DNA of 44,641 nt from Chlorokybus atmophyticus (lineage: Eukaryota > Plantae > Mesostigma and Chlorokybus algae): positions 1 to 44,641 of the forward strand of contig RHPI01001611.1 in assembly GCA_009103225.1 (NCBI GenBank). Reading direction: 5' to 3'. Within the stretch, counting starts at the first letter, position 1. Each line of letters begins with the position of its first letter. Shown here in pieces: positions 8,960-37,224 of the stretch. A program made the position numbers and the translations under genes. The notes under the pieces were generated by a model. That model did no database searches. It had not been told where the DNA came from and saw only the letters and a program-made list of their open reading frames with translations.

Positions 8960-10758
8960 CAGGTTTGTTGTAGAATGCTTTGGCACCATTAAAGACTTCT
9001 ACTGCCTCCGTTGTTCTCAGCTTTTCCAGTATCCACCCGGGCCCGTGCCCACTCTTGTACATCAGTCTATTTGAAACTGCTAGGGATAAAGCGTGGCACC
9101 CTAGAGCCACAGCCAGCTCTTTGACCTTTTCATCGAGCGTCTTCAGTGGCAGCCTCTATCTCAGCAACTCACACGCAGAAACCTCTTCAAGATTCTTCAG
9201 CTCCAGGACATCATGGTTGCCACCCATTCGCTGACGAGCAAGCAGTATGACATGGCAAGGTCCTTAAGTCGGCAGGTACTTTACATACTGCCGGTCATCG
9301 TCCACGTCGTCCAACACTAAAAGACAAGGTGTCTCCAACTGTTCTAGTGCTGTCCGGATCTCCAACACAAAGTTGAGGTGTTTGTCCTGATCGAGGCGCA
9401 AAATGCTTGGGAGCCACGACCTGCAACATCAATAATCAATGATTTGTTGCTCAGCTTTTTGTTAAGGTTGAGTTCTTGCACACCTGCAACATACGATGGG
9501 CAGGGACATATAGAGCTGCCCAAGAGAGCCAGCTGAGGCTCTTACCTTGTTTTATCACCACCCAAGTCAATACCTAGTGGTTTTGCCAACCTCAGACAAC
9601 TGTTGTGCAATGCCTCCTTGCTGGCATCGATCCAGAGCAGCTTGTCGTACTGGTGTCGGCAGTTTTGCACATACTTCAATGCCAGCTGCGCCTTGCCTGC
9701 ACCGCCCATGCCTTGGATGCAGACGCAGCTACAATTACTCAACTTGTGACCAAGATCTGCTGGATCTTTACCCCTTTCCACAAATGCATGTTGTCACGGT
9801 ACGGCGTCGTGTTGTCTCCCTTCTCTGTGGTGCACGGCCGTTTGAGCAGCCAACAAACATCCAGGACAATGGCACGGGCGTAGGTGTTCTCGTAATTGTC
9901 ATATTCCTGCATGACCTTCATGCATACAGTTGCAACGTCTTGAACCGTTGTTTTCCACACGTCTTCATCCATGCTGCACTTTGTCCACAGCTTCCCCCCG
10001 TGATGCTCCCAGACTAAACCTGCTGAGACATTGTCAGACGCAGCTACAATTACTCAACTTGTGACCAAGATCTGCTGGATCTTTACCCCTTTCCACAAAT
10101 GCATGTTGTCACGGTACGGCGTCGTGTTGTCTCCCTTCCCTGTGGTGCACGGCCGTTTGAGCAGCCAACAAACATCCAGGACAATGGCACGGGCGTAGGT
10201 GTTCTCGTAATTGTCATATTCCTGCATGACCTTCATGCATACAGTTGCAACGTCTTGAACCGTTGTTTTCCACACGTCTTCATCCATGCTGCACTTTGTC
10301 CACAGCTTCCCCCCGTGATGCTCCCAGACTAAACCTGCTGAGACATTGTCAGATGCAGTATGGTCAGATTGAGGGACCCAAGGTTCACTAACTCCCGGTT
10401 GGTCACAAACACTATCGCATTGTACCTGCTTTACTCTCACTGCATCGATGTCGTCAAGGGTGACACTATAGCAAACTGGCAAACAGTGTTCCCGGTCCAA
10501 AAATGTGCGGAGCTCTTGCATGCAATACTTGTTGGTCAAGAACCCGGGAGACAGCACCACAACACCATATGTTGCTTTCTTCATGGCTGAGTCTATCCTT
10601 TTAGGCGAAAAAATGCCCATTCGCAATGACGTATCGTCAAAGAATACCTGTAACTTCTGCCTCTCAAGCTCGTCCTTCAACCATGCACAAAAGCCCCTCT
10701 TTGTGTCTGGAACCCGATGAGAAAGAAAGACGTCGTAATGCTTATCTTGACCAGCCAT
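8960..10758 (-). pseudogene. TIR-NB-ARC pseudogene of the TIR-NB-ARC-TPR (TNP)-like type, C-terminally truncated
   Basis: TIR motifs YDVFLSHR, VFFDD, VVVLSPGF and YCMQEL. P-loop CIQGMGGAGKAQLA, LLWIDAS, Walker B LLVLDDV (about 9300-9330) and GLPL-equivalent GCHALSLAV. A frameshift precedes the P-loop, in-frame stops occur near 9265 and 9200, and there is an internal 315-bp duplication. Confidence 0.8.
9720..10349. repeat. 315-bp tandem duplication (2 copies)
   Basis: 9720-10034 matches 10035-10349 with one difference seen (cttctc vs cttccc). Junction microhomology CAGAYGCAG. Confidence 0.92.
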
Positions 10759-10915
10759 GACTCCACCTCACACTGACAGTCCGCCACCACAATACGCCAC
10801 CGTCAACGGTGACGCAGCGCTGCGCCAGGTCAAACGAACAATGTGAGGGCGCCCAGTCTAAACACAAGCTTGAAGTGAGTGGTTAAGCTGACACAAGCTG
10901 CTAAGCTAAACTTCA

Positions 10916-11600: not shown

Positions 11601-11785
11601 GCCGTTTGCTTGTCATGCCTTGATTATGCACATTTAGTAGGCTAGAAATATGCATGCTGGTTTTACAAAATCAACCACATGTGGTTGCAATCCACAAACC
11701 TGTCAACAGGCATGCAACAGCATACACTGTATGCATAGCATGCACGTAGCCGAATGCTCCAGTCGCAACCCCAGTAAACGTGAAC

Positions 11786-11875: not shown

Positions 11876-12499
11876 ACAACGACACACCTACCATCTGAAT
11901 CAATCACACAAGTTATGAAATATACGAATGCCACCTAAACACAGTAAAATGTGGCACATGCGCGTAACTCTCTTGCACACCTAGAGGACAACACCACAGA
12001 ATCACAATCTGGTACCTGTTGCCTTGGTAGCTGATTGGTAGCCAGCTCCTCACCCCATTGTCATTGCTGCCACACCTTGGCTGATTTGCGCAATTTGCAC
12101 GCGCGTATGTGTGTAACTATTGGTGTGCATAAGCGCGGCAAGGTGCAAGCTGAAGCGACTGTCAACGTCTGCATGTGAGTACACAGAAGTGAAATGTACT
12201 TGCGGACACATGCATGTATGCAGGCTTGCCTATACAAGCTGGCACTTTCAGACATCCACCTATGACTTTTGGAATTTAATGACCACGTAATGCTGGCTCA
12301 TAGGCCACACGGGTCAGTGGTCTATTAGCCAGCTTATAGCATGCCGTTTAAGCCACACTAGTCAGTGCAGTCCTTGAGCCAGCCTCATAGGCTGCACTGG
12401 ATAGTGTAGCCCATGAGGCTGCACTACCATAGCTGGTAGCCTAGCAAAAGTGTGTAGGTGTGCACATGCATGCACGCATGACAAAGAGCACTTGCATGN

Positions 12500-13033
12500 C
12501 ATGACCTTCATGCATACAGTTGCAACGTCTTGAACCGTTGTTTTCCACACGTCTTCATCCATGCTGCACTTTGTCCACAGCTTCCCCCCGTGATGCTCCC
12601 AGACTAAACCTGCTGAGACATTGTCAGATGCAGTATGGTCAGATTGAGGGACCCAAGGTTCACTAACTCCCGGTTGGTCACAAACACTATCGCATTGTAC
12701 CTGCTTTACTCTCACTGCATCGATGTCGTCAAGGGTGACACTATAGCAAACTGGCAAACAGTGTTCCCGGTCCAAAAATGTGCGGAGCTCTTGCATGCAA
12801 TACTTGTTGGTCAAGAACCCGGGAGACAGCACCACAACACCATATGTTGCTTTCTTCATGGCTGAGTCTATCCTTTTAGGCGAAAAAATGCCCATTCGCA
12901 ATGACGTATCGTCAAAGAATACCTGTAACTTCTGCCTCTCAAGCTCGTCCTTCAACCATGCACAAAAGCCCCTCTTTGTGTCTGGAACCCGATGAGAAAG
13001 AAAGACGTCGTAATGCTTATCTTGACCAGCCAT
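12500..13033 (-). pseudogene. Duplicate TIR-domain fragment (part of the 2275-bp duplication)
   Basis: Translation matches the N-terminal part of ORF 10054-10758 and breaks at the N at 12499. Confidence 0.8.
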
Positions 13034-19128: not shown

Positions 19129-19527
19129 TGTAAGAAGAGGGGGTGCTCCCTCCTCCCTTTAATCCCCTACCCCAACACCGCCACCAGCCACGACGCCGTT
19201 ACCGCCGCCGCCAGGGCAACTGCCGAAGCAGAACATCACCTGGCTATGGCGGCCGTACTTATCTGTAACACTGATATCAACATGAGACTCTTGAGACTCA
19301 TATCAGCTGCGTTGGCGGTCACTGCGTTAGCAGCGCCGCCATGCGGCTGATATGAGTCTCAAGAGTTTCATGTCGATATCAGTGTTACAGATCTGTAACA
19401 CTACATTAGAGCCTTAACATAGGTTAACGGCCCTAATATGGCTTAATAGGCTTTATAATTCCATTGGGACCCTTATTTAATCTTACATAAGGGCGGGGAA
19501 CCTCTATGGAGGTAGCACACCGTTACA
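19129..19527 (-). repeat. Gypsy 3' LTR (TGTAA...TTACA), preceded on the minus strand by the polypurine tract AAGTGGGGAGGAA (19528-19540)
   Basis: Terminal TG/CA, adjacent polypurine tract, and homology to 25930-26259. Confidence 0.92.
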
Positions 19528-19649
19528 TTCCTCCCCACTTAGGTTTCAATGTCCTCATTGAAGGGTTAGCAAAGCCCCACCACGAGTAAAAAAACGAAAG
19601 TAGTCAGAGAACCAGGACCGAAGCGGTAAAGATGTCTGCTAGCACCCTT

Positions 19650-22600
19650 TTACCGTCCGCGTGTGGACACAGTACTCCAGTACCCCCGAAGAATCTCCAA
19701 GCAGTTGGTAAGATTCCTTTCGGGCTCCTATGTATTGTGCTCAACACCATACCCTTTCCATTTCACCAAATAAGACGGCGCGCGTCCGCGTCGAGGCTTA
19801 CGATAACTCAGGATTGCTTCCACCTCATACTCAAAAGTATCGTCGCCATCCACTGTAACGGGGGGTGGAGGAGGTTGAGCCCGACCGTCAGAACGGTACG
19901 GTTTCAATACACTTACATGAAACATTGTGAATGCGTATCGACTTTGGCAATTCTAAACGATACGCGTAAGTGCCGACTCAATCAATTACTTTGTAAAGGG
20001 CTTATCCAGCGAGGGAAAAACATGCGGGTACCCACTCCCTTGATGGATATGTTTTTGGTGCTGAGACCGAACAGCCCACTTCGTAGTTGGCCTCTCTACG
20101 ATGCGCACCAGCATGAGCTTTTTGTCTGTCTTGCGCTGTGCGCAGATAGTCCTTCGCCAACGCTAACCTATCCTGCATGGCCGAAGCCGTCTCGCGCGCT
20201 GCAGGTACGCGAGTTATGTCGGTAGCGGGCAACTTAATGGTCGCAGCAATCAGTGGATGCACTCCGTAATCCAAGAAGAACGGGGTTTCTTGCACACTCT
20301 CTTGCCATGCATTGTTAATCGCAAACTCAGCCATTGGCAGATAGACATCCCAATCAGACTGGTTTGGACTCACATAATGCCGGATGGTTTCCTCAATCAC
20401 CTAATTGGCGCGCTCTGTCTGACTATCCGTCTGTGGATGGTAAGCTGTGCTCATGTTCTGCTGAATATGTAAAAAGCTGCAAAGCGACTTCCAGAACTAA
20501 GCTACATATTGCGGATCGCGATCAGACACAAAGTGGCGAGGCAATCCATGGAACTTAAACACAGAGGCGACAAAAACCATCGCTAACTCATGGGAGTCTG
20601 TTTCCGTGCGGCAAGGGACAGTGTGAACCATTTCTGTTAAACGGTTCACAAAAATTGCGACTGCAGTGTGCCCTAATGCTGTCTCCGGAGCTCAGTCCAT
20701 ACTCACATTTTCCCATTTGCCATCAGGAACCGGCAAAGGTCGCAGCAACCCAGCGGGTTTCTGATGTAACGGCTTGTCACGCTAACATTTGTCACACGTG
20801 TCAACATAATGCTTCACGTCAACAGGCAACGATGGCCACCAGTACAATAGTTGCGCTGCCTTAATAGTCTTGCGACCCCCTCGAGTGCCCAGCATACGGT
20901 GGATCGTGTATTTCAGCTATGCATTTCATGCGCAACCCAGCATGGTCAGGTATCACCAAGCTGGCGCCCATATATGAGTTGTCTCTTTTGTCAAGCTCTT
21001 GTACATTCTCTTGTATGGAGAACCATGGGTCTAATGCATACCCCTGTAAAACAGCTTGCACAAACTCATCATCAGGAGGCAATGTACCCTGCGTTGCAAG
21101 CAACTGCGCACGCATAACTGCCAACAATGACGGACAGCGACTCAAAGGATCTGCCACGTTGGTCCTGCCCGGCAGGTATACCCATTCAAAGGTAAACCGC
21201 GACAGGAATTCATTCCAGCGAGCTTGCCTACGCGGAAAGTTTAGCTGTGTTGAGAAGTACACCAACGGGTTGTGATCAGTCACCACTGTGAGTTGAACTC
21301 CCTCCAAGTAACATCGCCATGTTTCAAGAGCATGCACTATACCAAGCAATTCCTGCTCAGTGGTAGTGTAGTTCACCTCTGCTGGGATGAATTTCCTACT
21401 CTTTTAAGCACATGGTCGGCCATTCTGTAGCAATACTGCACCACACCCAAGGGTGGAGGCATCGCTAATCACAGTGAAGTGTTTATTCCAATTTGGCAAT
21501 GCCAATGATGGTGCCGAAGTCAAAGCCAGCTTCACAGTTTCCTGTGCTGCTGTCCAAGAGAATGGGGCATCCTTTCGCAACAGTTTTGTCAAAGGCACCA
21601 CAACTGTAGAGTACCCCATCATAAACTTGCGAAAGTACTTTGCCAACCCCAAGAATGATCGCAATTGATGGATACTCTTAGGTTGAGGCCAATCTTCTAC
21701 CACTTGCACTTTGCGAGGGTCAGGTTTGACACACGCACCACTCACAATATGCCATAAGAATAGCAACTCTGTCTTGCAAAAGTCACACTTTGACGAGTTG
21801 GCAAACAAGCAATATGTTCGCAGTAAAGCGAACACTGCTTCTGAATGCCTTTTGTGCTCTTCTTTTGTTTTACTTAAGACAATAATGTCATTCAAGTAAA
21901 CCATAACATGCTTGCCCAGCACGTTACCAAAAATTTTAATTATTTCCTTCTGAAACACCGCAGGTACATTTGTCAGTCCAATTTGCAAATGTAACACTTT
22001 GTACTGATAATGACCTGAAGGTGTTTTGAATGCTGTCTTGTAACATCAGAAGGGTGAATACGGATTTGATGATAACCGCTTGTCAAGTCTAGCGTATTAA
22101 AATACGTATTCCCCGACAGCTTATCAAACACATCATCAGTCCGTGGTAACGGGTATTGATTCTTTACCGTGATCTTGTTCAAAGCACGATAATCTACACA
22201 CATGCGCAATTTCCCATTGTTTATCATCACAAACAAAATGGGTGCGCCAAAGGGTGAAGAACTTGGTGCAATTAATCTATTCTCCAACAACTCCTTGATT
22301 TGAGTTTCCATTTCCCCCCTCTCATTGAGGCTGAGCCTATATATAGGCCGGAACGGAGGTTCACTATCAGGAAGTAATGGTATTGTGTGCCCGACACCTC
22401 GATCAGGGGGTGAGCCTGGCAACGCGTCTGAGAATATGTCCTGATTTTTCTCAATGATGTCTGCAACACCTTTCGTAATGCCTGGCACAAAGTCATCAGA
22501 CGACGTTAAGTGCACCAGGAAAGCCGGTGTGTTTTTACGCAACGCACGCTTCATTTGCAGTGCGGTGAGAAGCGCGGGGTCAGATTGCTTATGTACCAAG

Positions 22601-23100
22601 CTATGGGACCCTCTCACAGACAGCGTCACTCGTTTACGACCCTTTTTCAATGTGCACATCATGCACCAGTATCCAATGTCATTTTGACACTTTCCTGCCA
22701 TTCCTGTCCGAGTACCACATTAACACCAGCCATGTTGATGGACACCATTATGAAGGTGAGGTTGGCATGATAGCTACCAATCTTTACCTTCATTTTGGCT
22801 TCTCCCTTCACTGGCAATGTACCCCCAGGACCGACAGCTGAAAATAGTGAGGGTTTACACGCTATTTTCAGCTGTCGGTCCTGGCACAACCCATTGTTCC
22901 TCAATAAAGTTGTGTGTTGCACCAGTGTCAATGAAGAACGAACTGGTTATTCCTTGCATTGTGCCACTGAATGTCCACAACAAAGGTACAACCCGTCCTT
23001 GAAAAGTAGCCAAGAGTCCGCGACTAATGCGAGGGTTGAGTAAAATCGCTAACAATCGCACTGTCCCTGTTTCACGCTTGCTAAATTGCTTCAACACAGT
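19650..23100 (-). pseudogene. pol: Gypsy pol (protease-RT-RNase H-integrase-chromodomain) with many frameshifts and stops
   Basis: FFIDTGATHNFI (protease). RMCVDYRALNK, DLTSGYHQI and VYLNDIIV (RT). ISDASTLGCGAVL, EQELLGIV and TDHNPL (RNase H). EETIRHYVSPNQSDW (integrase). YEVEAIL...YLVKWKGY (chromodomain). Confidence 0.93.
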
Positions 23101-23401
23101 TCCCCCTCGAGTGTGTTTCAACCATGGGCCATGATATTTAGGCACCATCACTACCACTTAAGGTTCTGTGCTTACTTTGCAACTCACTCAAAGTGTGCAA
23201 CACATCGGTAAGCATGTTAAACTCCGCATGTACCAACACACAAGCATTCTCTTCCACCTTTTCAACATCAAAAAGTGGCAACTTGCTATGTGCTTGCCAT
23301 GCATGTGTCATTACATGCACTTGGGACAGCTCATCAAACCAGTTTGCTACTAGTACAAGCAACTGGTTATCAACCACTTGAACATTAATCACGGCGTAAT
23401 C

Positions 23402-24860
23402 CTATTCAACCTTCTTGGCCTTGCCCTTCCCTTCGGTTGGGCAGTTCTTTGCGATGTGGCCAGGCTGATGACAGATGTAACAGGTGCGAGCCGCAGCAGG
23501 CATGGCACCACCAGCAGGTGCGCCACTGGTAGAAGCAGCTAATGTCTTCGCCTTCTTTGCCAGGTGTGCACTCGGATGAGAGAAACGCTTTCCTCCCACC
23601 CCCAGCGGCTTGGCCGAAACTGCCACATGTGACTTGTCCTGCACCGCCGTGTCATTATTGTACAGGTACATGCTCAGCTTCTACAGCTTGGCCAAGTCCT
23701 CTGGAAGCCAAGGAAGTCCCGTTGCCGTGTTGTAGTGCAGCTGATCACGCATATGCGCATCCAAGCCGCGTTTGTACAACTCAAACTGCTCGGTCTTGTC
23801 CATGGGCATGAGGCCGCTGTTTGCACGACCCACCAATGCCTGAAACTCCTGCAGATAGGTTGAGGCCGCCCGACCATTCTGGCGCAACTTGCTGAGCTTG
23901 TTGCGAGCCTGAGTAGCCGGGTCCATGCCACCATAGCGTTCTGTCAGGAACTGGAAAAGTGCCTCCACTGTTTTGGAAGCACCATCTTCTGTCTGCCTCG
24001 CCCATTCGGCGAGAGCATCAGATGGCATGAGCAACTCAGCAATAGCCATGTGCTCATTAACCGGGCGCTTGAGTGCCGTCAAGTAATGCTCGACAGTGAC
24101 CACCCAGTTGTGAATACTGACGCTGCCGTTAGGCTTGAACTTCTCAGGCTTGTTTAGCACTGTAACCGGCAGCCCCGCTGATGTACCAGCTGCTGAAGTA
24201 GCACGCGCCACCTGTTGGCGCAGCGCCACTAACTCAGACTGTATAGCATCGAGGCGTGCCGTCAACTGCACTAGAGTACTCGGCCAGTCAACTTGTCTTC
24301 CAAGTTAGGTCCCAAGTACCAGAATACGTCCTTGCAACGCTGTAAGGTTTCCACTCCCAAGTTGGCTAAAGCCTCAAACGCCATTCGCTTGCCTTCGCAA
24401 GGGAGAGGCTTATCATATACGGTCATGATAGCAGCCATCTTTTAATCACCTCGCACGAGTGGCGGGATGTTGTTTGCCAACTCATGTTCAAGCATGCGGA
24501 TCACCATCTGCTTGCTTGCACGAGGGAGTGTGGCAAAGTCTGTCTCATAGCCATCACGAACCGTTTGCGCCCATGCATCCCACGTTTCCTGACGAAGCTG
24601 AGGGTGGGCAGCATGTAGAGCTTTACGCTCTGAGGCATACTTTTCAATGGCCCCGCCAATAACACTCTGTGTGTCCACTGCAGCTGGTCCACTTTGAGAA
24701 GACTGTTTGGGAGAAGCTTTGCCGTCTTGCTTAGCTCCTTCCTCCTCACTGTCAGTAAGCTTATAGCTTTCACTCGTATCAGAGTAGTTCACTTCCTCTT
24801 CACTCGATGGCTCATATGATGTGGACTTCTCCACATCATCCCCTCCTTGGCCAGACATCT
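23402..24860 (-). pseudogene. gag: Gypsy gag with acidic N-terminal extension and CCHC zinc knuckle; disrupted
   Basis: ORFs 24442-24906, 23681-24271 (KPEKF...LRQNGRAASTYLQEF) and 23402-23671 (CYICHQPGHIAKNC). Confidence 0.85.
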
Positions 24861-25655
24861 GCCCAAGAATACAAGCCGTCAATAGTAGAAGTGTGCAAGT
24901 GCACAAACACGCAAGTTGTGCACTGCAAAAGTGTTAAAATCCATAGATTTTGTCTCGTCAAGTTTCAAGTGCTTAACGTGGAGTATGCAGCTCAAACAAG
25001 AGCTCTCTACACACCTTTTTAATAGAAACAAACCGCACGCGAATCCACGCGGCGGTTCACAAGTTACAACTTGTCAAAGTTTTCACTTTGTACAACTCAG
25101 CTCAACCCACAATTGTAATTGACACATAGGGTGCCAAATCTTGTTGAATCAACCCTACAGGCTGATATCAACGAGTTGTGAGTTGTGAGTTTGATATTGG
25201 CCGCTTAGAGTGACTCTGGCGGCCTCACCGCACTGACTGGCATTAATGGCAGCTGATGTTGCCACCGGACTGCCTCACAAGGGTTGGTTTTGTGAATACA
25301 ATTACACACCCTTCACACCACCACAAATCCACGTGGTGGCAAGCACACAAGCACAAGCACGGTAATGTTATCACAATAATGTGATTACAAGTGATGTGCT
25401 GGGCATGTAATGCTTGGGGGATAGGCTGCCTGAGTGGCCGCCTTCCCCTACAGCAAGCTAGGCTAGGCTAGGCTAGGCCAAGGCAGCTCGGCTGCGCTAG
25501 GCTAGCAGGCAAGCATGCAAGCTAACTACACCAGCAGCAGCGTTTAACTACTACAATAACGACATCTAACATTCATCACTACCCACCCTAGTGGGTAGCG
25601 GCTGCTAGTGTCGCCGTCGCCGCCGCCCCCGCCGCCTGCCGCCTAAGCCCGCCGN

Positions 25656-26839
25656 CATTCGCGGCCAAACTTAAGGACGTGATAGGTCGCATTGATACCT
25701 ACCCGTAGAGACTATGATGTAGGAAAACGGCTTAGTTGATTTTAAGTTATAAATTTTACAAAATGGACATTTTTGGGTTAAAAATGGGTATGATTGCCCC
25801 AAGCTTTGGGGCGTAATGACTTGGTCATGTGGTGTTTACCAGGGCGATAAACTGAATGGGGTTTTTTGCATTGAGTTTGTATGCCGATAGAGAGCTTACT
25901 TCCCAAGTTTCATGCAATTCGACGCGGATTGTAAGAAGAGGGGGTGCTCCCTCCTCTTTTTAATCCCCTACCCCAACACCGCCACCAGCCACGACGCCGC
26001 TACCGCCGCCGCCAGGGCAACTGCCGAAGCAGAAGATCCCCTGGCTATGGCGGCTGCGTTAGCAGCGCTGTCGTGCGGCTGATACGAGTCTCATGAGTCT
26101 CATGTCGATATCAGTGTTACAGATAAGTAACACTACATTAGGGCCTTAACATAGGTTAACGGCTCAAATATGGCTTAAACGGCTTTATAATCCCGTTGAG
26201 GCCCTTATTTAATCCTAATTAAGGGCGGGGAACCTCTATGGAGGTAGCACACCGTTGCATTGGACCCCGCCCTTAATTAGGATTAAATAAGGGCCTCAAC
26301 GGGATTATAAAGCCTATTAAGCCATATTTGGGCCGTTAACCTATGTTAAGGCCCTAATGTAGTGTTACTTATCTGTAACACTGATATCGACATGAGACTC
26401 ATGAGACTCGTATCAGCCGCACGACAGCGCTGCTAACGCAGCCGCCATAGCCAGGGGATCTTCTGCTTCGGCAGTTGCCCTGGCGGCGGCGGTAGCGGCG
26501 TCGTGGCTGGTGGCGGTGTTGGGGTAGGGGATTAAAAAGAGGAGGGAGCACCCCCTCTTCTTACAATCCGCGTCGAATTGCATGAAACTTGGGAAGTAAG
26601 CTCTCTATCGGCATACAAACTCAATGCAAAAAACCCCATTCAGTTTATCGCCCTGGTAAACACCACATGACCAAGTCATTACGCCCCAAAGCTTGGGGCA
26701 ATCATACCCATTTTTAACCCAAAAATGTCCATTTTGTAAAATTTATAACTTAAAATCAACTAAGCCGTTTTCCTACATCATAGTCTCTACGGGTAGGTAT
26801 CAATGCGACCTATCACGTCCTTAAGTTTGGCCGCGAATG
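25656..26839. repeat. Large palindrome: 575-bp arms (25656-26230 and 26265-26839), 34-bp spacer, starting at a single N (25655)
   Basis: The arms are reverse complements with 3 mismatches seen, all in the LTR part. Each arm holds about 300 bp of LTR and 274 bp of flank. Confidence 0.93.
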
Positions 26840-28008
26840 GCTAGCAGATATCAACAAACAACCCCCATATCCCCAAGTTGGGGGCGGTTCCCAAGTTGGG
26901 CACATTTACCCTAGTGCTCCCGAAATCTTGCTACTTTAACATGTCATGTACAGCATGATGTGCTTTTAAGTCATGTCGTGTCATGCCGGCATATGCATGA
27001 AGCAACTCAGGTCTCATGCGGGCTCCATTCTGGGCCAGAGGATTCTGGCGCATGTCACTTGTGCTCAGACTTGTTTGCTTGAGTTGCCGGCGGCACGGCT
27101 CGGTCTTTGAAACCTCAAACACCAGAGTCCACAGCAAGTCAGTCCAGTCTTCGTGTCAAAAATTTTTAGAGGGCGGCATTCTTACTACCTACCTTGTTCT
27201 CTTTGACCGGCGTTGCCAGGCCGGGGCGACAAGTTTCGTGTCACATGTCACATGTAGCCGCTGCGACAAAGTCAAGCTTACCGCAAAGACTTTCTCTCCT
27301 ACCTCTCATAGGAGTTTTCGCATTATGTTGAGCCCGCTTGTTGACGCTGTGGGCGGGAGGGAGGAGGGGGCGGGCGGCGAAGCCTGAAGCCTAAGCCTGG
27401 TAAGAGGTTGTTGTGGTTTGCTAGCCGGAAGGTGCAAGACGCCGTCAGTGCTGCCTGTTTGTGTACCGACCAGGGCAACAGCTTGCTCAAGCTTGGCTGA
27501 CATGCACACATACCGGCGTAGCAGTGTACTGCTTGCGTTGCTTGACGCTAGCCGCTGTAGCAAATCTACGGCTTCTGCATTTTGCCTTCGCGTTGTTTGA
27601 TGTGGTCGCTCACGTTCAGCCATGCTGTAGACATGTCCATAGTTGCCGCCATCATGCTCGCCAGCTGAATTGAGCAATGCCATGCTTCATGCTCGCTAGC
27701 TTATCGCAGTAGTGCCATGGCCAGTCCGACTCGCCGTAGCTTGACTGGGCTGGTATTTGGTTTAGGACAGCTTACCCCTCCACGTTGATCTGACTGGCAA
27801 GCGTACACACATTGAGTAAGTCTGGCATGCAGTCTAGTTTGCAGGAGCGTTTGCACTGATGATGCGTGACGTCGCAACAGCTCCAAGGCAATCTGATTTG
27901 TTGAACATCGATTGACCATCAACACCCTCTGGCATGCGCAGTGCCCGCTGTACGAAGGGGAAGGAGCAAGAGAGCGCATGCACGCGTGGGGCTCATCACA
28001 ACCTACAC

Positions 28009-31000
28009 ATGGCTGAACAATCGCCTCCCTGGCCCACCATCCTCGCCTGCCTGGTCGGCTTGGTTGGTTTCCTGGTTGGACTATACACATTTGTGCGCAA
28101 CAGGGGAGATGCTCGGAACAGGCAGGCAGCAGAGCTGTCTATCAAGTACGATGGTGTTTATGACGCGATGGATGTTATCAGGCACTACCAGGACAAACAG
28201 GACTTCTATGTCGACTTCAAGCAGAACCGGCCACCGGAGATTGAGAAGGCTCGGATCAAACTGAGAAACTTCTGGGATTGGGTTACAACGCAGTATGAGC
28301 GCGGTTCCATCTCCAGGGACATTCTTTCTTCCACAAGCGACTGGCTTGCGAGAGGCAACAACTACCGGTTGCTGGTGGAGCCCATCGACATTGCCAACTG
28401 GTATTCTCCAAGGGGGGGAAATTTTCATGCCTCCACCGGCAAGCATTACCTTCGCCTCTCGGTTGCCGAGGCTGTTCTGCGGCCGCGACGTTATTACCTG
28501 CTGGAGCAGGCATATCGCAATGCGTATCCCGAGAGGAATGAGAGCTCGATTGATTGCGCATTGCAGGAGCTCATCACTGCTGGGGTTACAGGGGCCCGGC
28601 AACCCGACGATGACCTCAGGCAGCAGGCTCATCAGCTCTCCAATGACAAAGCGGAGTCAGCGACAATGATTAGCAACCTGGCACTCCTATCAAATGACCT
28701 GGGCAAGCACAGTGCCCCAGTTGCAAACCGTATTGGTAAGCTGGTGACCAACACAAACAATGCCATTCCAAACGTGCTTGATGTGTCTTGTGTTGATATG
28801 TATTATGCATTTGGGGTCAAGGTTCGTGTTGATGCTGTGCAAGTCATTCCTTGTTCACCAGCTGAGTGCAAGATGGCAATTCTGTCAGTCGTAAGGCCAT
28901 AAGAACTGACTGACAAGTCGACTCGCAGAGAGGGTCGACTCGCTGTCAAAGCCTACTCATCACACACACTGCGACGTTTTCCTTAGCTATACAGAACCTG
29001 ATATTAAGCCGGATTTCATCGACAGCTTGCATCGCATTTTCAACGAAGTAGGTATCACCTGCTTTGCTAAGCTCAGCTTGCAGCCCGGGGAAACCAACCA
29101 AGCATGGGATGTCATCAGTGCCAATGTACAATCCGCTCGCATAAAGATACTTGTTCTATCTCGTGGCTACGTGGACTCCTGCTACTGCCTGGAAGAGCTG
29201 CGCGCCATGATGGAGAATCCAGACAACATCATGCCCATCTTCTATGACAAAATTGGCGACCTGAATGCCATGACAGTACAGGAAAGCATTCACAGGTGCG
29301 CGTGTTCTACTGTCGTCGCCAATCAATCAGCAAATATTCCTGATGGCCAACATGTTGTGTGTTTTCAGCACATGCCAGCGCAGTGGATACCTATTTGTCC
29401 AGAAGGAATTTGAGTACAATGAGGCTTGGAAGAAAGCATTGGATATAACGGGCCGGATGCGTGATCAGTTCAAGTAAATTGAGTCGTCACTTGTGTACGT
29501 TTGCTGTGGTGTCATGCCTGGTTTCTGACGTTTGGTCTTGGTCAGCACCACGAGTGCTTTAGCTGAGCAAGTGGCGAAAGACGTGCTGAACAAGTTACGT
29601 CCCCCTGTCTTGGAAGTCGCCATGTATCTGGTGGACATTGATCGCCGCGTTGAAGATGTACTCAAGAAGTTGAGTGCTGCTACCGCTGGAAGCAAGGTCG
29701 TCATGCTGGGTCTTTGGGGCATGGGCGGCATTGGGAAGACCACACTTGCAAAGGCGATATATAACAAACTGTACAACAATTTTGCTGGCAGCTGTTGCGT
29801 TGTAGACGTCAGGACAGAAGCTGGTCAAGAGAAGCTGGTGCAGCTGCAACTGCATATGCTTCAACAGCTGGCTGAGTTTCCCTTGATAAATGCATCCCAG
29901 TCGATTGCTGAAGGAAAGGCACTTCTGAGAAATCATTTGCAAAAGAGAAAGGTGCTGCTCTTTGTTGATGACATCTGGAGCGAGGATCAGAAAGAAGCCT
30001 TGCTCGGTCCTTTCAATCTGGAGGACGCCAACCCTCTGTTGGGTGAAGGAAGTTGTGTTCTGGTGACCTCTCGTAACCGCAAGTTGCTGAGGGGGCATGA
30101 GAAGCATACATTGGTGTGGGAAGTGTTACTGCTCGACTATCAGTCTGCTAGAGAACTGTTCTGCCAGTATGCCTTCAGGTCGCATCCAGTGCCTGTACAG
30201 TTGGAGCCAATCGTGACAAATATCATCAGGGCGTGTCAGGGCCTGCCGCTCATGCTTGAGGTCGTGGGCTCCTTTCTGGGCAAGCGCAGCAGCAGTGATG
30301 GGCAGATTTGGAAGGACACACTGGATCAACTACAGCAGGTGATGGTCGTCGAAGGTACAAGTGACAACCGATTGTGGAATTTATTGATGCAAAGTTATGA
30401 TAGGCTATTGCCTGATCTACAGCATGTTTTTCTCGACATCTGCTGCTTTGCACTGGGGAAGAACAGGGACGTTCTGCTTCCTGTGTGGGGCAAGCGTGCA
30501 CGATTGATCCTGAATCACCTGCTGGAGTTGTCTTTCATTCGCTTGGTACCAAGCAAAAGTCTGCATGCTGGTCATTGCTCGTCAGCTTTTGCTGGCAATG
30601 CTATGGTCCTTTTAGTACATGACCAGCTCCGCGACATGGGGCGAGCGATTGCCCATCTTGCCAACCCGCGCAAGCACATCTGGATGTTAAAGGCCATAAG
30701 CGACATACCTCAGAACAAGGTATGCGCGTGTTCCATGCATGGTGCTCTTCTGAGTTGCTGAAATTGCATGCGTGCATTGCGCAAAACAGAATTGTAGTCT
30801 AGAAACTCGTCACAACTTATGTATGCTGGCAATAACGGCTGTTGCCCACACATGCTGTTCAACGCAGGACTACGAGTTTGTCGAGACTTTGTCTTATGCT
30901 GGTGGCAACTGGAGTGAAACAGTATATGGCATGCCCTTCATGCCTAGTCTCCGCTTGCTAGATCTTGGCACAATTGATTGGGATGGTGCATTTCTCCGGG

Positions 31001-32241
31001 GGCTCCCCAAAGAGCTGGTCTATCTGGAGTGGGAACATCCACGCTGTTCAGCCTTGCACACTATGCTGCGCAATGTCGCGGCATGCACAAAGTTGGCTGT
31101 ACTGGTCGTAGGACAACCCATCGACAATGGATCAACTCTGCTGATCGAGTCCATTGGAAACCTCAAGGCGCTGCAAATCCTGGTGTTGAGGGGCTGCCAA
31201 TGTCTGCAAACAGTGCCTAACGAGCTTGGCGGGCTTGCTAAGCTACGGACTCTAGTTCTCACCAACGCTGGTTTGCGCATGCTCCCCCCGTCCGTTGAAA
31301 AACTCATGGCTCTGCAAACGCTTGATCTGAGCGGGTGCAGCAGATTGGAGGCGCTGCCGGAGTCCTTTGGCAAGCTCGCTGCTCTCCAAGAGCTGTACCT
31401 GAGTAAGTGTGTCAGCTTGGCAGCGCTGCCAGAGTCCTTTGGTGAGCTCGCTGCTCTGCAGACGCTGGACCTGAGTAAGTGTGTCAGCTTGGCAGCGCTG
31501 CCAGAGTCCTTTGGTGAGCTCGCTGCTCTGCAGACGCTGGACCTGAGTGAGTGCGGCAGCTTGTTTGTTCTGCCGAAGTCCTTTGGTGAGCTCGCTGCTC
31601 TGCAGACGCTGGACCTGAGTGAGTGCCGCAGCTTGGTGACGCTGCCAGAGTCCTTTGGCAAGCTCACTGCCTTGCAACAGCTGCAACTGAACGAGTGCGG
31701 CAGTTTGGGGGCGCTGCCGGAGTCCTTTGGCAAGCTCGCTGCTCTGCAAGAGCTGTACCTGAGTAAGTGTGTCAGCTTGGCAGCGCTGCCAAAGTCCTTT
31801 GGTGAGCTCGCTGCTCTGCAGACGCTGGACCTGAGTGAGTGCGGCAGCTTGTTTGTTCTGCCGGCGTCCTTCGGCAAGCTCACTGCCTTGCAACAGCTGC
31901 AACTGAACGAGTGCGGCAGTTTGGGGGCGCTGCCGGAGTCCTTTGGCAAGCTCGCTGCTCTGCAAGAGCTGTACCTGAGTAAGTGTGTCAGCTTGGCAGC
32001 GCTGCCAAAGTCCTTTGGTGAGCTCGCTGCTCTGCAGACGCTGGACCTGAGTGAGTGCCGCAGCTTGGTGACGCTGCCAGAGTCCTTTGGCCAGCTCGCT
32101 GTTATTGACAAGTTGGACCTGAGTGGATGTGGCAGCTTGGCGGTGCTGCCGGAGTCCTTTGGTGAGCTCATCGTTCGTCGAGAGCTGGACCTGCGCTTGC
32201 CACTTGGCGGCGCTACTGGAGTGCTTTGGCAAGCTTGCTGA
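28009..32241 (+). CDS. TIR-NB-ARC-LRR (TNL-like) receptor with N-terminal TM segment and unknown domain; 5 exons, about 1290-1300 aa
   Basis: Proposed exons: 28009-28890, 28931 (or 28952)-29295, 29369-29473, 29546-30719, 30868-32241. The last three introns are GT-AG with consistent phases; the first intron is inferred. TIR CDVFLSY...YCLEEL, P-loop GMGGIGKTT, Walker B VLLFVDDIW, VLVTSR, GLPL, FLDICCF, VHDQLRDMG, then 24-aa LRRs. Confidence 0.85.
31312..32175 (+). repeat. 12 x 72-bp LRR coding array
   Basis: Consensus LQTLDLSECxSLxxLPESFGxLAA; several units are near-identical at the DNA level. Confidence 0.95.

Positions 32242-33732: not shown

Positions 33733-33827
<95 letters not shown>
33679..33827. 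repeat. (GA)n microsatellite with a single N at 33732
   Basis: Seen directly. Confidence 0.97.
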
Positions 33828-34098: not shown

Positions 34099-37000
34099 CT
34101 ACTGATGAATTCCGGCAGCACCTTGTCGGAGCATCCGTTTAGGGAGCACACATTGCTTCAATTCAGCGAGCTGATCATTTCCAGATTCCGGCAGCTTCGC
34201 CAAGCTGCCGCATCCGTGCAAGGCCAGCGTCTTCAGAGCAGGGAGCTCGCCGAAAGACTCCAGCAGAGCCGCCAAGCTGCCGCACCCGCTCAGACTAAGC
34301 GTTTGCAGAGCCGTGAGATCTCCAACAGACTCAGCGAGCAAGCGCAAACCAGCGTTAGTGAGAACGAAAATTTGTAGCTTAGTAAGCCTGCCAAGCGCGT
34401 CAGGCACCTAGTGCAGACATTGACAGCCCCTCAGCACCCGGCCAGCGCCTTGAGGTCCAATATTCTCAGTCAGCAGCACTAAGACATGCTGCAGGACTTC
34501 TTCTGATCAGGACGAGCAGTTTTGTGCATGGAGCACCAGTAAAGTGCTCAAGGCTTCACAGCGCACACATGTTCACTCCAGATAGGCTCATTAGCCCGCC
34601 CCCCNNNNNNNNNNNNNNNNNNNNNNNNNNNNNNNNNNNNNNNNNNNNNNNNNNNNNNNNNNNNNNNNNNNNNNNNNNNNNNNNNNNNNNNNNNNNNNNN
34701 NNNNNNNNNNNNNNNNNNNNNNNNNNNNNNNNNNNNNNNNNNNNNNNNNNNNNNNNNNNNNNNNNNNNNNNNNNNNNNNNNNNNNNNNNNNNNNNNNNNN
34801 NNNNNNNNNNNNNNNNNNNNNNNNNNNNNNNNNNNNNNNNNNNNNNNNNNNNNNNNNNNNNNNNNNNNNNNNNNNNNNNNNNNNNNNNNNNNNNNNNNNN
34901 NNNNNNNCCCCCCCGAATACTGCCATCCCAATCAGTTGTGCCCAGGTCTAGCAACCGGAAACTAGGCATGCCATACAATGTGTCGCTCCAGTTGACAGCA
35001 GCATAAGACATAGTCTCGACAAACTCATAGCCCTGCATTCAACAGCATGTCAACTGTAGGCAACGTCCTTGTGTGCACCATACTTGTTGTAATAAGTTTC
35101 TGGACTGCAAGTTTGTACTGATTGCAGCAACCCTCGTAAGTCAGACAGAAGCAGCATGAGAAGGTGCAATGGAACACGCGCCTTGCACCTTCTGAGGTGA
35201 GTCGCTCATGGCCTTTGGCATCCAGATGTGCTTGAATGGAGACTCCCATCCGTTGTTCCAGTATAGTATAGTAGGACGTACATTTTGCAATCATTTGGCC
35301 CATGTCGCGGAGCTGGGCGTGCACTGAAAGGATGTTGTTGCTCGGTACCCAACGAATGAGGGACAAATCCTGTAGGCGATCCAAATACCATGATGCGAGG
35401 CTGGCCCACGCTGGAAGCGGAATGTCCTTGCCCTTTCCCAAAGCGAAGCAACAGTCTAGAAAAACTGGCCGTATTCTGCCAGTGGGCGATAGCCATTCGT
35501 AACTGAGTTTCAGCCTTTTCCACAACCGGTCTTCTTGTGTACTTTCGAGCCCCTCTGCCTCATGTAGAAGATCTAGTGCGTCTTCCCAATTCTGCACATC
35601 ACTGTTGCGATGCGTGCGGAGAAAGGAGCCCATGACGTCAAGTGAGAGCGGCAGTCCCTGGCACGCCGTGATGATGTTCTCCACAATTGACTTCAAGTAC
35701 CCAGGCACTGGATCCGAGCCGAAGGCGTGTTGGCAAAATAGATCTCTGGCGGGCTTATCGTTGAGCAGCCGCACCTCCTCCACCAACGTATGCTGCTTCT
35801 CCCCCTTGAGTAAGTTGCAGTCGCGAGACGTCACCAGCACACAACTGCCCTTACCAAGCAGAGGGCTGTCTCCCCACAGATTAAAAGGACCGAGCAGGGC
35901 GTCGTGTTGAAAAGGGCTCCAGATTTCATCGACAAAGAGCAGCACCTTCTTCTCTCGCAAATGATGTTTCAGAGTTTCCTTTCCTTCAGCAATAGTGTTG
36001 GATGCGTTAACGAAGGAAATATCAGTCAGCTGTTGAAGCATAAGCAGTTGCAGTTGCACCAGCTTTTCTTGATCAGCTTCTTTCCCGACCTCAATAAAGC
36101 AGCAGCTGGGTGCAAATTTTCTGTGCAGCTTGTTATAAATCGCGCTTGCGAGTACAGTCTTCCCAATGCCGCCCATGCCCCAAAGACCCAGCATCACGAC
36201 CTTGCCTCCAGCAGCGGCTTTCAACTTCTTGAGTACGTCTTCAACGCGCAAGTCAATGTCTACTGGGTATCTGGCAACATATAAAGAAGGGCGGTCTAAC
36301 TTTCTCAGCACGTCTCTCACCACTTTATCTGCTAAAGCAGTCCTGGTACTGAAACAGAGCAAACGTCAGCAAACAATGCATGACAACCGCAGCAAAGACG
36401 TACATCAGTGGCAACTGGACTCACTTGAACCGCTCAAGCCTTCGGCCTGTTTTTGAAAATGCATGATCCAACGCATTGCAATAAGCAGATTCATTCTGGA
36501 CAAAGTGCTTCCCACCATGCAGGCATGCGCTGAAACCAAAGAACATGTTGGCAACTGCCAAGAACATATTGGCAACTACCAGGAACATCCTGCTGATCCA
36601 CAGGAAAACCGCCCGCCAGCAAATACTTCTCTTTATTGTGGTACGCAATGTGTCAAAATCTTTGTCAAAGAAGATAGGCATGACAACGTGTGTTGAGTCC
36701 TCCATCATAATGCGCAGCTCCTCAAGGCAGTACCAAGACTCTCCGTAACGAGGAGACAGAACGGGCATCTTGATGCGTGCGGACCGTACATTGTGAGTAA
36801 TGATACTCCAGGCTTCATGAGTCTCCCCTGGCTGCAAGCTCAGCTCGTCTACGAAGCAGGTGATTCCAACTTTGATAAAACTGCGATGCAGATAGTCGAT
36901 AAAGTGGTCCTTGACCTCAGGCCCTCTATGGCTCAGGAAAACGTCGCAGGGACAATGAGGGATAGTCTTTGACCGCGGCACAATGTCTCCGTCTACGACG

Positions 37001-37224
37001 CGCAGGTTGACTGGTCTGTGGGCTCCTGGAGCACTGTTACTTGAGGGGAACAAGGTCTTGCAATCAGCTGGTGAACAAGGAAGTTCGAGTTGCACAGCAT
37101 TGACACGAGCCACAAACCACAACGCACACCAACGTGTCAAACACGTTTCGATAGTACTGTTTGTGTTGGTCACCAGCTTACTGTTGAGATTTGTACTGGA
37201 GGCCAACGTGTCCATTGCGACCAT
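34099..37224 (-). pseudogene. TIR-NB-ARC-(short LRR) paralog of 28009-32241 with a disrupted LRR region
   Basis: TIR CDVFLSHRG...YCLEEL, P-loop GMGGIGKTV, VLLFVDEIW, GLPL, VHAQLRDMG. In-frame TAG at 34408-34410 (CQCLH*VP versus CQCLQTVP in the paralog), indels at 34410-34600, and only about 3 LRRs. Confidence 0.82.
34605..34907. other. 303-N assembly gap flanked by C runs
   Basis: Seen directly. Confidence 0.98.

What the first reader, a model, noticed from the sequence alone, without database searches (positions are those of the whole stretch)
8960..37224. Subtelomeric cluster of TIR-NB-ARC immune-receptor-like genes in a probable alga
Seen: three loci within about 36 kb of the telomere. 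Two are land-plant-style TIR-NB-ARC-LRR paralogs arranged tail to tail; one is a distinct TIR-NB-ARC with a WIDAS motif. All keep the TIR Glu (YCLEEL/YCMQEL). One looks intact and two are decaying. Established: that Glu is the NADase catalytic residue, and TNLs are abundant in land plants but sparse in green algae. Inference: a telomere-proximal birth-and-death zone for algal intracellular immune receptors, carrying two architectures side by side.
Basis: partly seen in the sequence, partly recalled or inferred. Interest (0 to 1): 0.82.

Follow-up and report, generated by a model that had tools for sequence, protein, structure and literature searches.

The report
Subtelomeric algal TIR receptor gene cluster
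Next to a chromosome end of the early-branching green alga Chlorokybus lie one working and two broken immune-receptor-type genes, and the working one is transcribed as a single gene that also carries a membrane anchor and the "EP" domain so far treated as a hallmark of the seed-plant immune hub EDS1.

Summary
Three TIR/NB-ARC loci lie 7-36 kb from a terminal (TTAGGG)n array.

**Locus 2 (27934-32241, +)** is intact. Spliced RNA contigs from two studies give four GT-AG introns and one 3822-nt frame of 1273 aa. The order is TM helix, EP-like domain, TIR (catalytic Glu kept), TNL-type NB-ARC, about 14 LRRs. It is therefore not a plain land-plant-style TNL.

**Locus 3 (37335-34099, -)** is its tail-to-tail paralog, 70% identical in DNA. 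It has no TM-EP exon, its MHD motif reads VHA, and its LRR is cut to about 4 repeats with stops and frameshifts.

**The assembly gap (34605-34907)** hides no sequence homologous to the paralog. The frame is not kept across it, and the breaks lie in real letters.

**Locus 1 (10767-8910, -)** is a TIR plus NB-ARC remnant of the NB-ARC-TPR (TNP-like) type. It has a degenerate P-loop, two in-frame stops and no repeat domain. Its second TIR copy is probably an assembly artefact.

**Organism:** Chlorokybus, from Chlat1 paralogs at 79-80% identity and the published telomere motif.

Subtelomeric enrichment was not tested. This scan had already noted EP-TNL fusions on other DNA of this genome.

The parts
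8910..10767 (-). Locus 1: pseudogene remnant, TIR plus NB-ARC of the NB-ARC-TPR (TNP-like) type. TIR ORF is 10758..10054. NB pieces are 9793..9545 (P-loop GMGGAGKA, WIDAS), 9428..9267 (Walker B), 9263..9159 and 9155..8910 (GLPL-like). In-frame stops are TAA at 9266-9264 and TAG at 9158-9156. No repeat domain follows.
9720..10358 (.). 315-nt tandem duplication (two copies, 99.4% identical) inside locus 1, between the TIR and the P-loop
12499..14773 (.). Probable assembly artefact. 12500-14773 is 100% identical to 10225-12498 and is joined to it by a single N at 12499. It creates a second, spurious TIR ORF (13033..12362).
19129..26839 (-). Ty3/gypsy-type LTR retrotransposon (gag, protease, RT, RNase H and integrase ORFs) with a rearranged LTR palindrome at 25656-26839. 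It separates locus 1 from locus 2.
   Evidence: read from the ORF translations; not scanned against Pfam
27934..32241 (+). Locus 2: intact, transcribed 5-exon gene. Exons are 27934-28735, 28929-29295, 29369-29473, 29546-30719 and 30868-32241. It encodes 1273 aa (1248 if translation starts at the ATG at 28009): TM helix, EP-like domain, TIR, NB-ARC, about 14 LRRs of 24 aa. RNA contigs run on to about 32708 (3' UTR).
27934..28735 (+). Exon 1 of locus 2. It holds a hydrophobic helix (residues about 33-54; 19-aa Kyte-Doolittle mean 2.47) and an EDS1/PAD4-type EP-like domain. It is 79-80% identical to the stand-alone Chlorokybus TM-EP proteins Chrsp114S01653 and Chrsp114S01650.
31309..32169 (+). 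Array of twelve 72-nt (24-aa) LRR modules with a 216-nt higher-order period, inside exon 5 of locus 2
34099..37335 (-). Locus 3: inverted paralog of locus 2 (TIR, NB-ARC, LRR stump) with no TM-EP exon. Its MHD motif reads VHA. The LRR is reduced to about 4 repeats, with stops and frameshifts at 34593-34408. Its 5' part is probably transcribed.
34605..34907 (.). Assembly gap inside the first LRR-region exon of locus 3. The paralog comparison shows no homologous sequence is missing. The frame is not preserved across it.
43127..44641 (+). Copia-type gag / pre-integrase ORF (43127-44536) running into the terminal (TTAGGG)n array (44529-44641)

Best explanation
The last ~36 kb of a Chlorokybus chromosome carry a small, transposon-ridden cluster of NLR-type genes in three states.

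**Locus 2** is a live gene. Its mRNA joins an exon that is nearly a whole copy of a stand-alone TM-EP gene (membrane helix plus EDS1/PAD4-type EP-like helical domain) to a TIR-NB-ARC-LRR body. The TIR and NB-ARC are of the type found in seed-plant TNLs.

**Inferred mechanism for locus 2.** It is a membrane-tethered STAND switch. The LRR array diversifies by unequal exchange of 72-nt modules and senses a ligand. The NB-ARC then oligomerises, and the TIR domains, with the catalytic Glu in place, consume NAD+ to make nucleotide signals. The EP-like domain, whose seed-plant relatives bind exactly such TIR products, may read that signal in cis or in trans.

**Locus 3** is an old inverted duplicate (dS about 0.6-1.0; Ka/Ks 0.3-0.5, so it was constrained for most of its history). 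It has no TM-EP exon and a wrecked, shortened LRR. It is a pseudogene that is probably still transcribed.

**Locus 1** is the stump of a second receptor class, TIR plus NB-ARC of the TPR-associated, TNP-like type. It has lost its repeats and carries stops.

**Shown:** gene structures, splicing, domain homologies, breaks, organism.

**Inferred:** immune function, NADase activity, membrane topology, any role of the EP-like domain, and birth-and-death dynamics.
For: **Splicing and frame**
- The contigs of run X1 match the window with 0 mismatches. They skip 28736-28928, 29296-29368, 29474-29545 and 30720-30867, all GT..AG. Run X2, from another study, shows two of these joints.
- The joined exons give 3822 nt in frame with one terminal stop.
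- One 925-nt contig links 265 nt of the EP exon to the TIR exons and the start of the NB-ARC exon.
- The TIR exon has no in-frame ATG ahead of its core, and stops lie just upstream. It therefore needs exon 1.

**Domains**
- Pfam: EDS1_EP 1.9e-12 (47.7 bits, cut-off 23.1), TIR_2 7e-12, NB-ARC 5e-31, LRR_14 1.6e-48.
- PDB: PAD4 2.1e-8, rice EDS1 1.4e-6 and SAG101 1.4e-4 for exon 1; Roq1 1.1e-37 for the NB-ARC; RPV1, Roq1, RUN1 and L6 for the TIR, with the catalytic Glu column aligned.
- The P-loop, Walker B, GLPL, RNBS-D and a TNL-like HDQLRDMGR motif are intact in locus 2.

**Relatives**
- The NB-ARC query gave 12335 hits. The best named ones are angiosperm TIR-NLRs.
- In the tree, loci 2 and 3 are sisters (99). 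They sit in a 99-supported clade with unnamed environmental eukaryote sequences, beside the seed-plant TNL clade.
- Stand-alone TM-EP paralogs Chrsp114S01650 and Chrsp114S01653 are 79-80% identical to exon 1.

**Decay of loci 3 and 1**
- Loose ends of X1 and X4 contigs match locus 3 exactly at 37112-36887.
Against: - No activity, localisation or pathogen response has been measured.
- The runs are kept as contigs, so a single full-length transcript from 27.9 to 32.7 kb is not shown. Contigs break between 28212 and 28470 in the rows listed and inside the LRR array. Isoform proportions are unknown.
- The EP match covers mainly the first half of the Pfam model.
- The AlphaFold model of exon 1 was poor (pLDDT 55), and Foldseek gave no significant hit.
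- The locus 3 breaks sit next to an assembly gap, where sequence quality may be low.
- Splice sites of loci 1 and 3 are inferred by homology only.
- The tree's root, on the very long locus 1 branch, is unreliable.
Confidence: 0.8

Rival explanations
1. Two neighbouring genes, not one. A TM-EP gene (27934-28902, with its own stop) and a separate TNL sit side by side. The exon 1-to-TIR joint would then be a minor read-through or intergenic-splicing product without biological meaning.
For: - The exon 1 frame runs 56 codons past the donor to a stop at 28902.
- Stand-alone TM-EP paralogs of 258-331 aa exist and end close to the junction point.
- Locus 3 has its own ATG and a 5' coding stretch homologous to locus 2's intron 1.
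- Paralog TM-EP transcripts are abundant in the same run.
Against: - The TIR frame of locus 2 has stops immediately upstream and no ATG before the TIR core, so a separate TNL could not start.
- The only exact-match X1 contig listed across this place is the spliced one, with 255 nt or more on each side of the joint. In the rows listed, the only unspliced exact-match contig there is from X3, whose contigs are unspliced at three of the four introns and so look like DNA. Seventy further pieces were not shown.
- The joint keeps the frame through all five exons.
Confidence: 0.12
2. The decay is an assembly artefact. Loci 3 and 1 would be intact genes whose stops, frameshifts and truncations come from poor sequence near gaps and mis-joined contigs.
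For: - The window holds five N runs.
- There is a clear mis-join at 12499: 2274 nt repeated perfectly.
- The locus 3 breaks begin right after the 303-N gap.
Against: - Locus 3 differs from its paralog by at least five separate indels and stops over 200 nt.
- It has only about 4 LRRs before unrelated sequence and a (GA)n tract.
- It also has VHA instead of VHD.
- The locus 1 stops lie 700-800 nt or more from any N, inside motif-dense NB-ARC sequence. The P-loop Thr/Ser is replaced, and nothing repeat-like follows.
Confidence: 0.1
3. The contig is a contaminant or comes from a land plant, so these are ordinary plant TNLs.
For: The NB-ARC and TIR are most similar to seed-plant TNLs among named proteins.
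Against: - Identity to any seed-plant TNL is only 29-36%.
- The nearest proteins for exon 1 and the LRR are Chlorokybus Chlat1 models at 61-80%.
- RNA contigs of two runs, from two studies and carrying one organism label, match at 100%.
- TTAGGG, not TTTAGGG, caps the contig, as published for Chlorokybus.
- In the tree the loci fall outside the seed-plant clade.
Confidence: 0.02

Closest known systems
Seed-plant TIR-NB-ARC-LRR receptors (TNLs such as Roq1, RPP1, L6, N)
   Same: - The domain order is TIR, NB-ARC, LRR.
- The TIR has the catalytic Glu in the CLxEL context.
- NB-ARC motifs include a TNL-like HDQLRDMGR.
- The LRRs are of the LxxLxLxxCxxLxxLP type and hit RPS4B-like LRR models.
- Roq1 is the best solved relative.
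   Different: - Identity is only 29-36%.
- A TM helix and an EP-like domain precede the TIR.
- There is no post-LRR (C-JID) domain.
- There is a 16-residue insert before the MHD-like motif.
- The loci fall in a clade beside, not inside, the seed-plant TNLs.
EDS1 / PAD4 / SAG101 EP domain (Pfam PF18117)
   Same: Sequence homology is significant: Pfam above the gathering score, and phmmer hits on the EP domains of PAD4, EDS1 and SAG101. Shared blocks include RIxLxxFWD and YxLLxEPxDIANxY.
   Different: - There is no lipase-like N-terminal domain. Here the domain follows a membrane helix and is fused to a TNL.
- Mainly the first half of the model is matched.
- Ligand binding and heterodimerisation are untested.
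- The literature treats EP proteins as restricted to seed plants (PMC10834447; 10.1101/572826). It mentions only "short EP-like sequences" in green algae (bioRxiv 10.64898/2026.05.20.726525).
TNP / NB-ARC-TPR receptors (plant TIR-NB-ARC-TPR; actinobacterial FxSxx-system TPR proteins)
   Same: - The locus 1 P-loop region matches the NB-ARC-TPR model far better than TNL-type NB-ARCs do.
- It has an N-terminal TIR with the Glu kept.
- Chlorokybus has several catalogued TIR-NBARC-TPR genes (PMC11218826, Data Set S1).
   Different: - No TPRs are present.
- The P-loop reads GKA instead of GK[TS].
- There are two in-frame stops.
- It is a remnant, so membership cannot be completed.
Chlorokybus scaffold 114 cluster in the public Chlat1 annotation (Chrsp114S01645 NB-ARC-LRR; 01646 LRR-TIR/SEFIR-EP; 01649 TIR; 01650 and 01653 TM-EP)
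   Same: It has the same gene families side by side: TNL parts next to EP-domain genes. Identity to locus 2 parts is 61-80%.
   Different: - It is a different locus. It has two TM-EP genes, and its EP domain is also found C-terminal to an LRR.
- The models are split.
- No model there or elsewhere in the published NLRtracker list shows TIR, NB-ARC and LRR in one protein.

Membership tests
Plant TNL (TIR-NB-ARC-LRR) | N-terminal TIR domain with the catalytic glutamate | tested here: met
   Pfam TIR_2 scores 7e-12. The CLEEL Glu aligns with the CLDEL/CLEEL Glu of RPV1 and Roq1. The same holds for locus 3.
Plant TNL (TIR-NB-ARC-LRR) | NB-ARC of the TNL lineage with intact P-loop, Walker B, GLPL and MHD-type motifs | tested here: met
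   - Roq1 scores 1.1e-37, against 5e-13 or weaker for CNLs.
- The best named relatives all carry TIR, NB-ARC and WHD_ROQ1.
- Locus 2 itself gave no WHD_ROQ1 hit at E<=0.01.
Plant TNL (TIR-NB-ARC-LRR) | C-terminal LRR domain in the same polypeptide | tested here: met
   There is one open frame across all spliced exons. LRR_14 scores 1.6e-48 and RPS4B-like LRR_13 scores 9e-18.
Plant TNL (TIR-NB-ARC-LRR) | Post-LRR C-JID domain (typical of many seed-plant TNLs, not universal) | tested here: not met
   There is no Pfam hit beyond the LRRs. The protein ends about 20 residues after the last repeat.
Plant TNL (TIR-NB-ARC-LRR) | NAD+-cleaving activity and cell-death or immune output | not testable with these tools
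   This needs an enzyme assay or expression in planta.
EDS1 family (EDS1/PAD4/SAG101) | EP domain (PF18117) | tested here: met
   The score is 47.7 bits against a cut-off of 23.1. PAD4 scores 2.1e-8. The match covers profile positions 16-112 of 211.
EDS1 family (EDS1/PAD4/SAG101) | N-terminal class-3 lipase-like domain | tested here: not met
   No lipase hit was found. The EP-like domain is preceded only by about 30 residues and a TM helix.
EDS1 family (EDS1/PAD4/SAG101) | EP-fold helical bundle and a ligand-binding heterodimer cavity | tested here: inconclusive
   The AlphaFold2 model is all-helical but has pLDDT 55. Foldseek lists PAD4 and EDS1 chains at ranks 4, 6 and 9, but with E>0.1.
TNP (TIR-NB-ARC-TPR), for locus 1 | NB-ARC of the TPR-associated type | tested here: met
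   FxSxx_TPR scores 1.5e-11 (43.5 bits) on 78 residues, against 17 bits for the whole locus 2 NB-ARC. Matches to TNL-type NB-ARCs reach 25 bits at most.
TNP (TIR-NB-ARC-TPR), for locus 1 | C-terminal TPR repeats and an open reading frame | tested here: not met
   No TPR or any other Pfam hit was found in 7900-8911. There are two in-frame stops, and the P-loop reads GKA.
Subtelomeric NLR birth-and-death cluster | Paralogous NLR genes, intact and decayed, with transposons, within tens of kb of a telomere | tested here: met
   
Subtelomeric NLR birth-and-death cluster | Genome-wide enrichment of NLR loci near chromosome ends | not tested
   Only this window was available. Earlier notes of the scan list many TIR/NB-ARC loci but say nothing on their distance to telomeres.

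The most novel reading that the evidence does not exclude
Locus 2 would be a self-contained ancestral form of the TNL-to-EDS1 pathway. It would be a membrane-anchored receptor in which the TIR domain makes a nucleotide signal and the fused EP-like domain of the same protein, or of the abundant stand-alone TM-EP paralogs, perceives it. The TIR-EP partnership would then predate land plants, and in seed plants it would later have been split into separate TNL and lipase-EP (EDS1-family) proteins.
Probability: 0.15. Interest if true: 0.9.

Novelty: new variant of a known kind. Interest (0 to 1): 0.64.

Why it matters
TIR-type NLRs occur in plants that lack EDS1. How they signal there, and where the EP domain came from, are open questions. 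The literature places EP proteins in seed plants only.

This locus gives transcript-level proof that, in the earliest-branching streptophyte lineage, an EP-like domain is made as part of a complete TIR-NB-ARC-LRR protein. That makes the question testable: does the algal EP-like domain bind TIR products?

It also shows that the published NLR catalogue of Chlorokybus, built on split gene models, contains no complete T-N-L protein although at least one is expressed.

The subtelomeric setting, with an old inverted duplicate, a second receptor class in ruins and retrotransposons, resembles NLR clusters of land plants. As evidence for a general rule it is only one example.

Tried and rejected
- **Structure of exon 1.** AlphaFold2 on a 3-sequence alignment gave pLDDT 55. 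Foldseek against the PDB gave nothing at E<=0.001. This is no structural confirmation of the EP fold.
- **ESM Atlas for the locus 1 P-loop piece.** The machine was busy three times.
- **PDB search with the locus 1 P-loop piece.** Only chance-level hits came back.
- **The search of earlier findings by sequence and by words** returned nothing.
- **TM-EP remnant upstream of locus 3.** tblastn found none. The best DNA local alignment scored 14, against a shuffled mean of 12.1 and maximum of 16. Whether locus 3 lost the exon or never had it stays open. The weak protein-level resemblance in alignment A1 is not significant.
- **Pfam scans of 18 further ORFs outside the loci.** The only hits were a CXC/TCR domain, copia gag/pre-integrase and two sub-threshold DUFs.
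- **TPR or LRR downstream of locus 1.** None was found.
- **Window's own proteins in the public collections.** None was flagged in three word searches, so I cannot say whether locus 2 is annotated anywhere.
- Reads were laid on locus 2.
- **Restricted sequence.** The terminal TTAGGG array was not sent to any search tool.

Full report
**What the window is.** It is 44,641 nt at about 51% GC. It ends in 18.8 copies of TTAGGG on the + strand (44529-44641), the orientation expected at a right-hand chromosome end. Five N runs are present: 7576-7585, 12499, 25655, 33732 and 34605-34907.

**Organism.**
- Exon 1 of the intact gene finds only two proteins among 5.8 billion. Both are Chlorokybus atmophyticus JGI models, Chlat1 Chrsp114S01653 and Chrsp114S01650, at 79-80% identity.
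- The LRR region finds Chrsp114S01646 at 61%.
- A paper on plant telomerase RNAs reports CCCTAA/TTAGGG, not the usual plant TTTAGGG, as the Chlorokybus telomere repeat (PMC8287931).
- RNA contigs of two runs, from two studies and carrying one organism label, match the window without a mismatch.
- Earlier notes of this scan also name Chlorokybus. I took that as a lead and consider it confirmed.
- A land-plant or contaminant origin is excluded as far as these tools go.

**Gap test (done first, as asked).** The gap lies in locus 3, inside the region homologous to the start of exon 5 of locus 2.
- On the - strand the last aligned base before the gap is 34909, matching locus 2 position 31002.
- The first aligned base after it is 34585, matching locus 2 position 31020.
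- Locus 2 has 17 nt between these points. Locus 3 already has 20 real nt there.
- Nothing homologous is therefore missing. The 303 N stand for about zero bases, or for an insertion that could not be assembled.
- The homologous frames before and after the gap are out of register, whether the gap is 303 nt or 0 nt.
- Independently of the gap, the 200 nt after it carry stops at 34593-34588, 34575-34573 (a 2-nt deletion turns the paralog's Trp codon into TGA), 34509-34507 and 34410-34408. They also carry several indels relative to locus 2.

**Locus 2: structure.** Contigs of run X1 (0 mismatches) skip 28736-28928, 29296-29368, 29474-29545 and 30720-30867, each GT..AG. Run X2, from another study, shows two of these joints. 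Contigs of X3 run unspliced through three of the four introns, as DNA would. Joining exons 27934-28735, 28929-29295, 29369-29473, 29546-30719 and 30868-32241 gives 3822 nt in one frame with a single terminal stop. That is 1273 aa, or 1248 aa from the second ATG at 28009. Contigs continue to about 32708 (3' UTR).

**Locus 2: domains.**
- A hydrophobic helix at residues about 33-54 (19-aa Kyte-Doolittle mean 2.47), followed by basic residues.
- EDS1_EP, 1.9e-12, above Pfam's cut-off.
- TIR, 7e-12.
- NB-ARC, 5e-31.
- About 14 LRRs of 24 aa.

**Locus 2: nearest solved relatives.** The EP-like domain hits the EP domains of PAD4 (2.1e-8), rice EDS1 (1.4e-6) and SAG101 (1.4e-4) directly. The TIR is closest to RPV1, Roq1, RUN1 and L6, with the catalytic Glu aligned. 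The NB-ARC is closest to Roq1 (1.1e-37). WRR4-type ADR2, an RPW8-NLR and RPP1 follow at 1e-19 to 4e-17, and CNLs are at 5e-13 or weaker. All NB-ARC motifs are intact, including a TNL-like HDQLRDMGR.

**One gene or two?** Exon 1 corresponds to almost an entire stand-alone TM-EP protein, since the Chlat1 paralogs end about 12 residues after the junction region. The exon 1 frame continues 56 codons past the donor to its own stop. However, the TIR frame has stops just upstream and no ATG before the TIR core. In the rows listed, the only exact-match X1 contig across the junction is the spliced one. I therefore read locus 2 as a real TM-EP::TNL fusion gene. I give about 12% to the alternative that the joint is a minor read-through product.

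**Locus 3.** It is 70% identical to locus 2 over 28736-30986 / 37181-34923, and 77% over the first LRRs. It is convergent with locus 2, with 1.86 kb between the stop codons.
- Homology starts exactly at the first base of locus 2's intron 1. No TM-EP exon is detectable, by tblastn or by sensitive DNA alignment.
- Acceptors, and all donors except that of intron 2, are conserved. The exon 4/5 junction is out of phase at the homologous sites, although an alternative donor exists.
- The MHD motif reads VHA.
- Only about 4 LRRs remain.
- Against locus 2, Ka/Ks is 0.52 for the NB-ARC (dS 0.56) and 0.33 for the TIR (dS 0.97). The duplication is therefore old, and the copy was constrained for most of its history.
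- Loose ends of X1 and X4 contigs match 37112-37083, 37055-37038 and 36916-36887 exactly. The 5' part is probably still transcribed.

**Locus 1.** On the - strand it consists of these parts.
- A TIR ORF with YCMQEL. Its best solved relatives are the plant TIR-only protein AT1G72930, bacterial AbTIR-type TIRs, and L6.
- A 315-nt tandem duplication.
- NB-ARC pieces carrying GMGGAGKA (the P-loop Thr/Ser is replaced), WIDAS, LLVLDDVDD and a GLPL-like block. They are interrupted by TAA at 9266-9264 and TAG at 9158-9156, and they end at about 8910.

Nothing TPR- or LRR-like follows. The P-loop piece hits NCBIfam FxSxx_TPR, an NB-ARC-TPR family, at 1.5e-11. The whole locus 2 NB-ARC scores only 17 bits there. 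Locus 1 scores 25 bits at most against TNL-type NB-ARCs. It is thus the stump of a second, TNP-like receptor class.

The upstream second TIR copy belongs to a perfect 2274-nt repeat joined by one N. I read this as an unmerged contig overlap.

**Wider relations.** The locus 2 NB-ARC has 12,335 relatives at E<=0.001 among 1.84 billion representatives, none above 44% identity. The best named ones are angiosperm and conifer TIR-NLRs. In a quick maximum-likelihood tree:
- Loci 2 and 3 are sisters (SH-aLRT 99).
- They lie in a 99-supported clade with 13 unnamed environmental eukaryote sequences, one of them on a 190-kb metagenome contig beside PPR genes.
- That clade sits next to the seed-plant TNL clade.
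- The root, on the very long locus 1 branch, is not reliable.

**What is already known.**
- NLRtracker was run on the Chlat1 proteome, and two Chlorokybus TIR domains were tested in N. benthamiana (PMC11218826; bioRxiv 10.64898/2026.05.20.726525).
- The primary output lists 17 Chlorokybus entries. Seven are TIR-NBARC-TPR. Only fragments (NL, TL, T, LRR-TIR-OTHER) carry an LRR, and no model has TIR, NB-ARC and LRR together.
- The fragments on scaffold 114 (01645 NL, 01646 LRR-TIR/SEFIR-EP, 01649 T) sit next to the two TM-EP genes that my search found. This is a paralogous cluster with the same families.
- The literature places EP proteins in seed plants only (PMC10834447; 10.1101/572826). It concedes only "short EP-like sequences" in green algae.
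- This scan had already noted EP-TNL fusions on other pieces of this genome.
- The new elements here are the N-terminal, membrane-anchored arrangement and the direct splice evidence.

**Verdict.**
- The cluster itself is an ordinary-looking NLR cluster in an unusual organism.
- Subtelomeric enrichment is untested.
- The part a specialist would find surprising is the expressed TM-EP-TIR-NB-ARC-LRR gene.
- Immune function, NADase activity, membrane topology and any signal-reading role of the EP-like domain are inferences.

Noticed in passing
window 10225-14773: A 2274-nt block is repeated at 100% identity, with a single N (12499) at the junction. This is the classic signature of two overlapping contig ends joined end to end. 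It doubles the locus 1 TIR ORF and an upstream repeat.
   Followed up: partly
window 28029-28547 (run X1): Contigs about 10% different from the window cover the EP exon at much higher contig depth (475-1068, against 84-100 for the exact-match contigs). One of them carries 5' letters that encode the Chlat1 paralogs' GLITTQ. The stand-alone TM-EP paralogs therefore seem to be strongly expressed.
   Followed up: partly
public protein P0274 (Chlat1 Chrsp114S01646): This 680-aa public Chlorokybus model has LRRs (51-286), a TIR_2/SEFIR-like stretch (381-445) and an EDS1_EP hit (596-668). NLRtracker listed it as (LRR)(TIR)(OTHER). It lies beside an NB-ARC-LRR model (01645), a TIR model (01649) and two TM-EP genes (01650, 01653).
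   Followed up: partly
window 31554-31705: A contig of run X3 skips 150 nt (about two LRR modules) with 6 other letters in between. This is either copy-number variation of the 72-nt LRR modules between samples or collapse of the repeat during assembly.
   Followed up: no
window 19129-26839: A gypsy-type LTR retrotransposon has an almost perfect 575-nt inverted LTR pair (25656-26230 / 26265-26839, 99%) at one end.
   Followed up: no
window 43127-44641: A copia-type gag / pre-integrase ORF runs straight into the telomere repeats, so the element is cut off by the chromosome end.
   Followed up: no
window 33679-33827: A (GA)74 microsatellite containing one N lies between the 3' ends of loci 2 and 3.
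   Followed up: no
window 1348-2274: A 308-aa ORF has a Tesmin/TSO1-like CXC domain (2e-5). It is the only other Pfam hit above its family's cut-off outside the receptor loci and the copia ORF.
   Followed up: no
L001 (ENA ERZ25067493, contig ctg171155), 1125-4494: A 190-kb metagenome contig of an unnamed eukaryote carries TIR, NB-ARC+WHD_ROQ1 and a further 464-aa ORF in a row, next to PPR genes. Its NB-ARC belongs to the clade that holds loci 2 and 3.
   Followed up: partly
window 279-439, 10916-11076, 13191-13351: A 161-nt repeat (91% identical, inverted) occurs at the window start and just upstream of the locus 1 TIR. It is probably a small mobile element.
   Followed up: no
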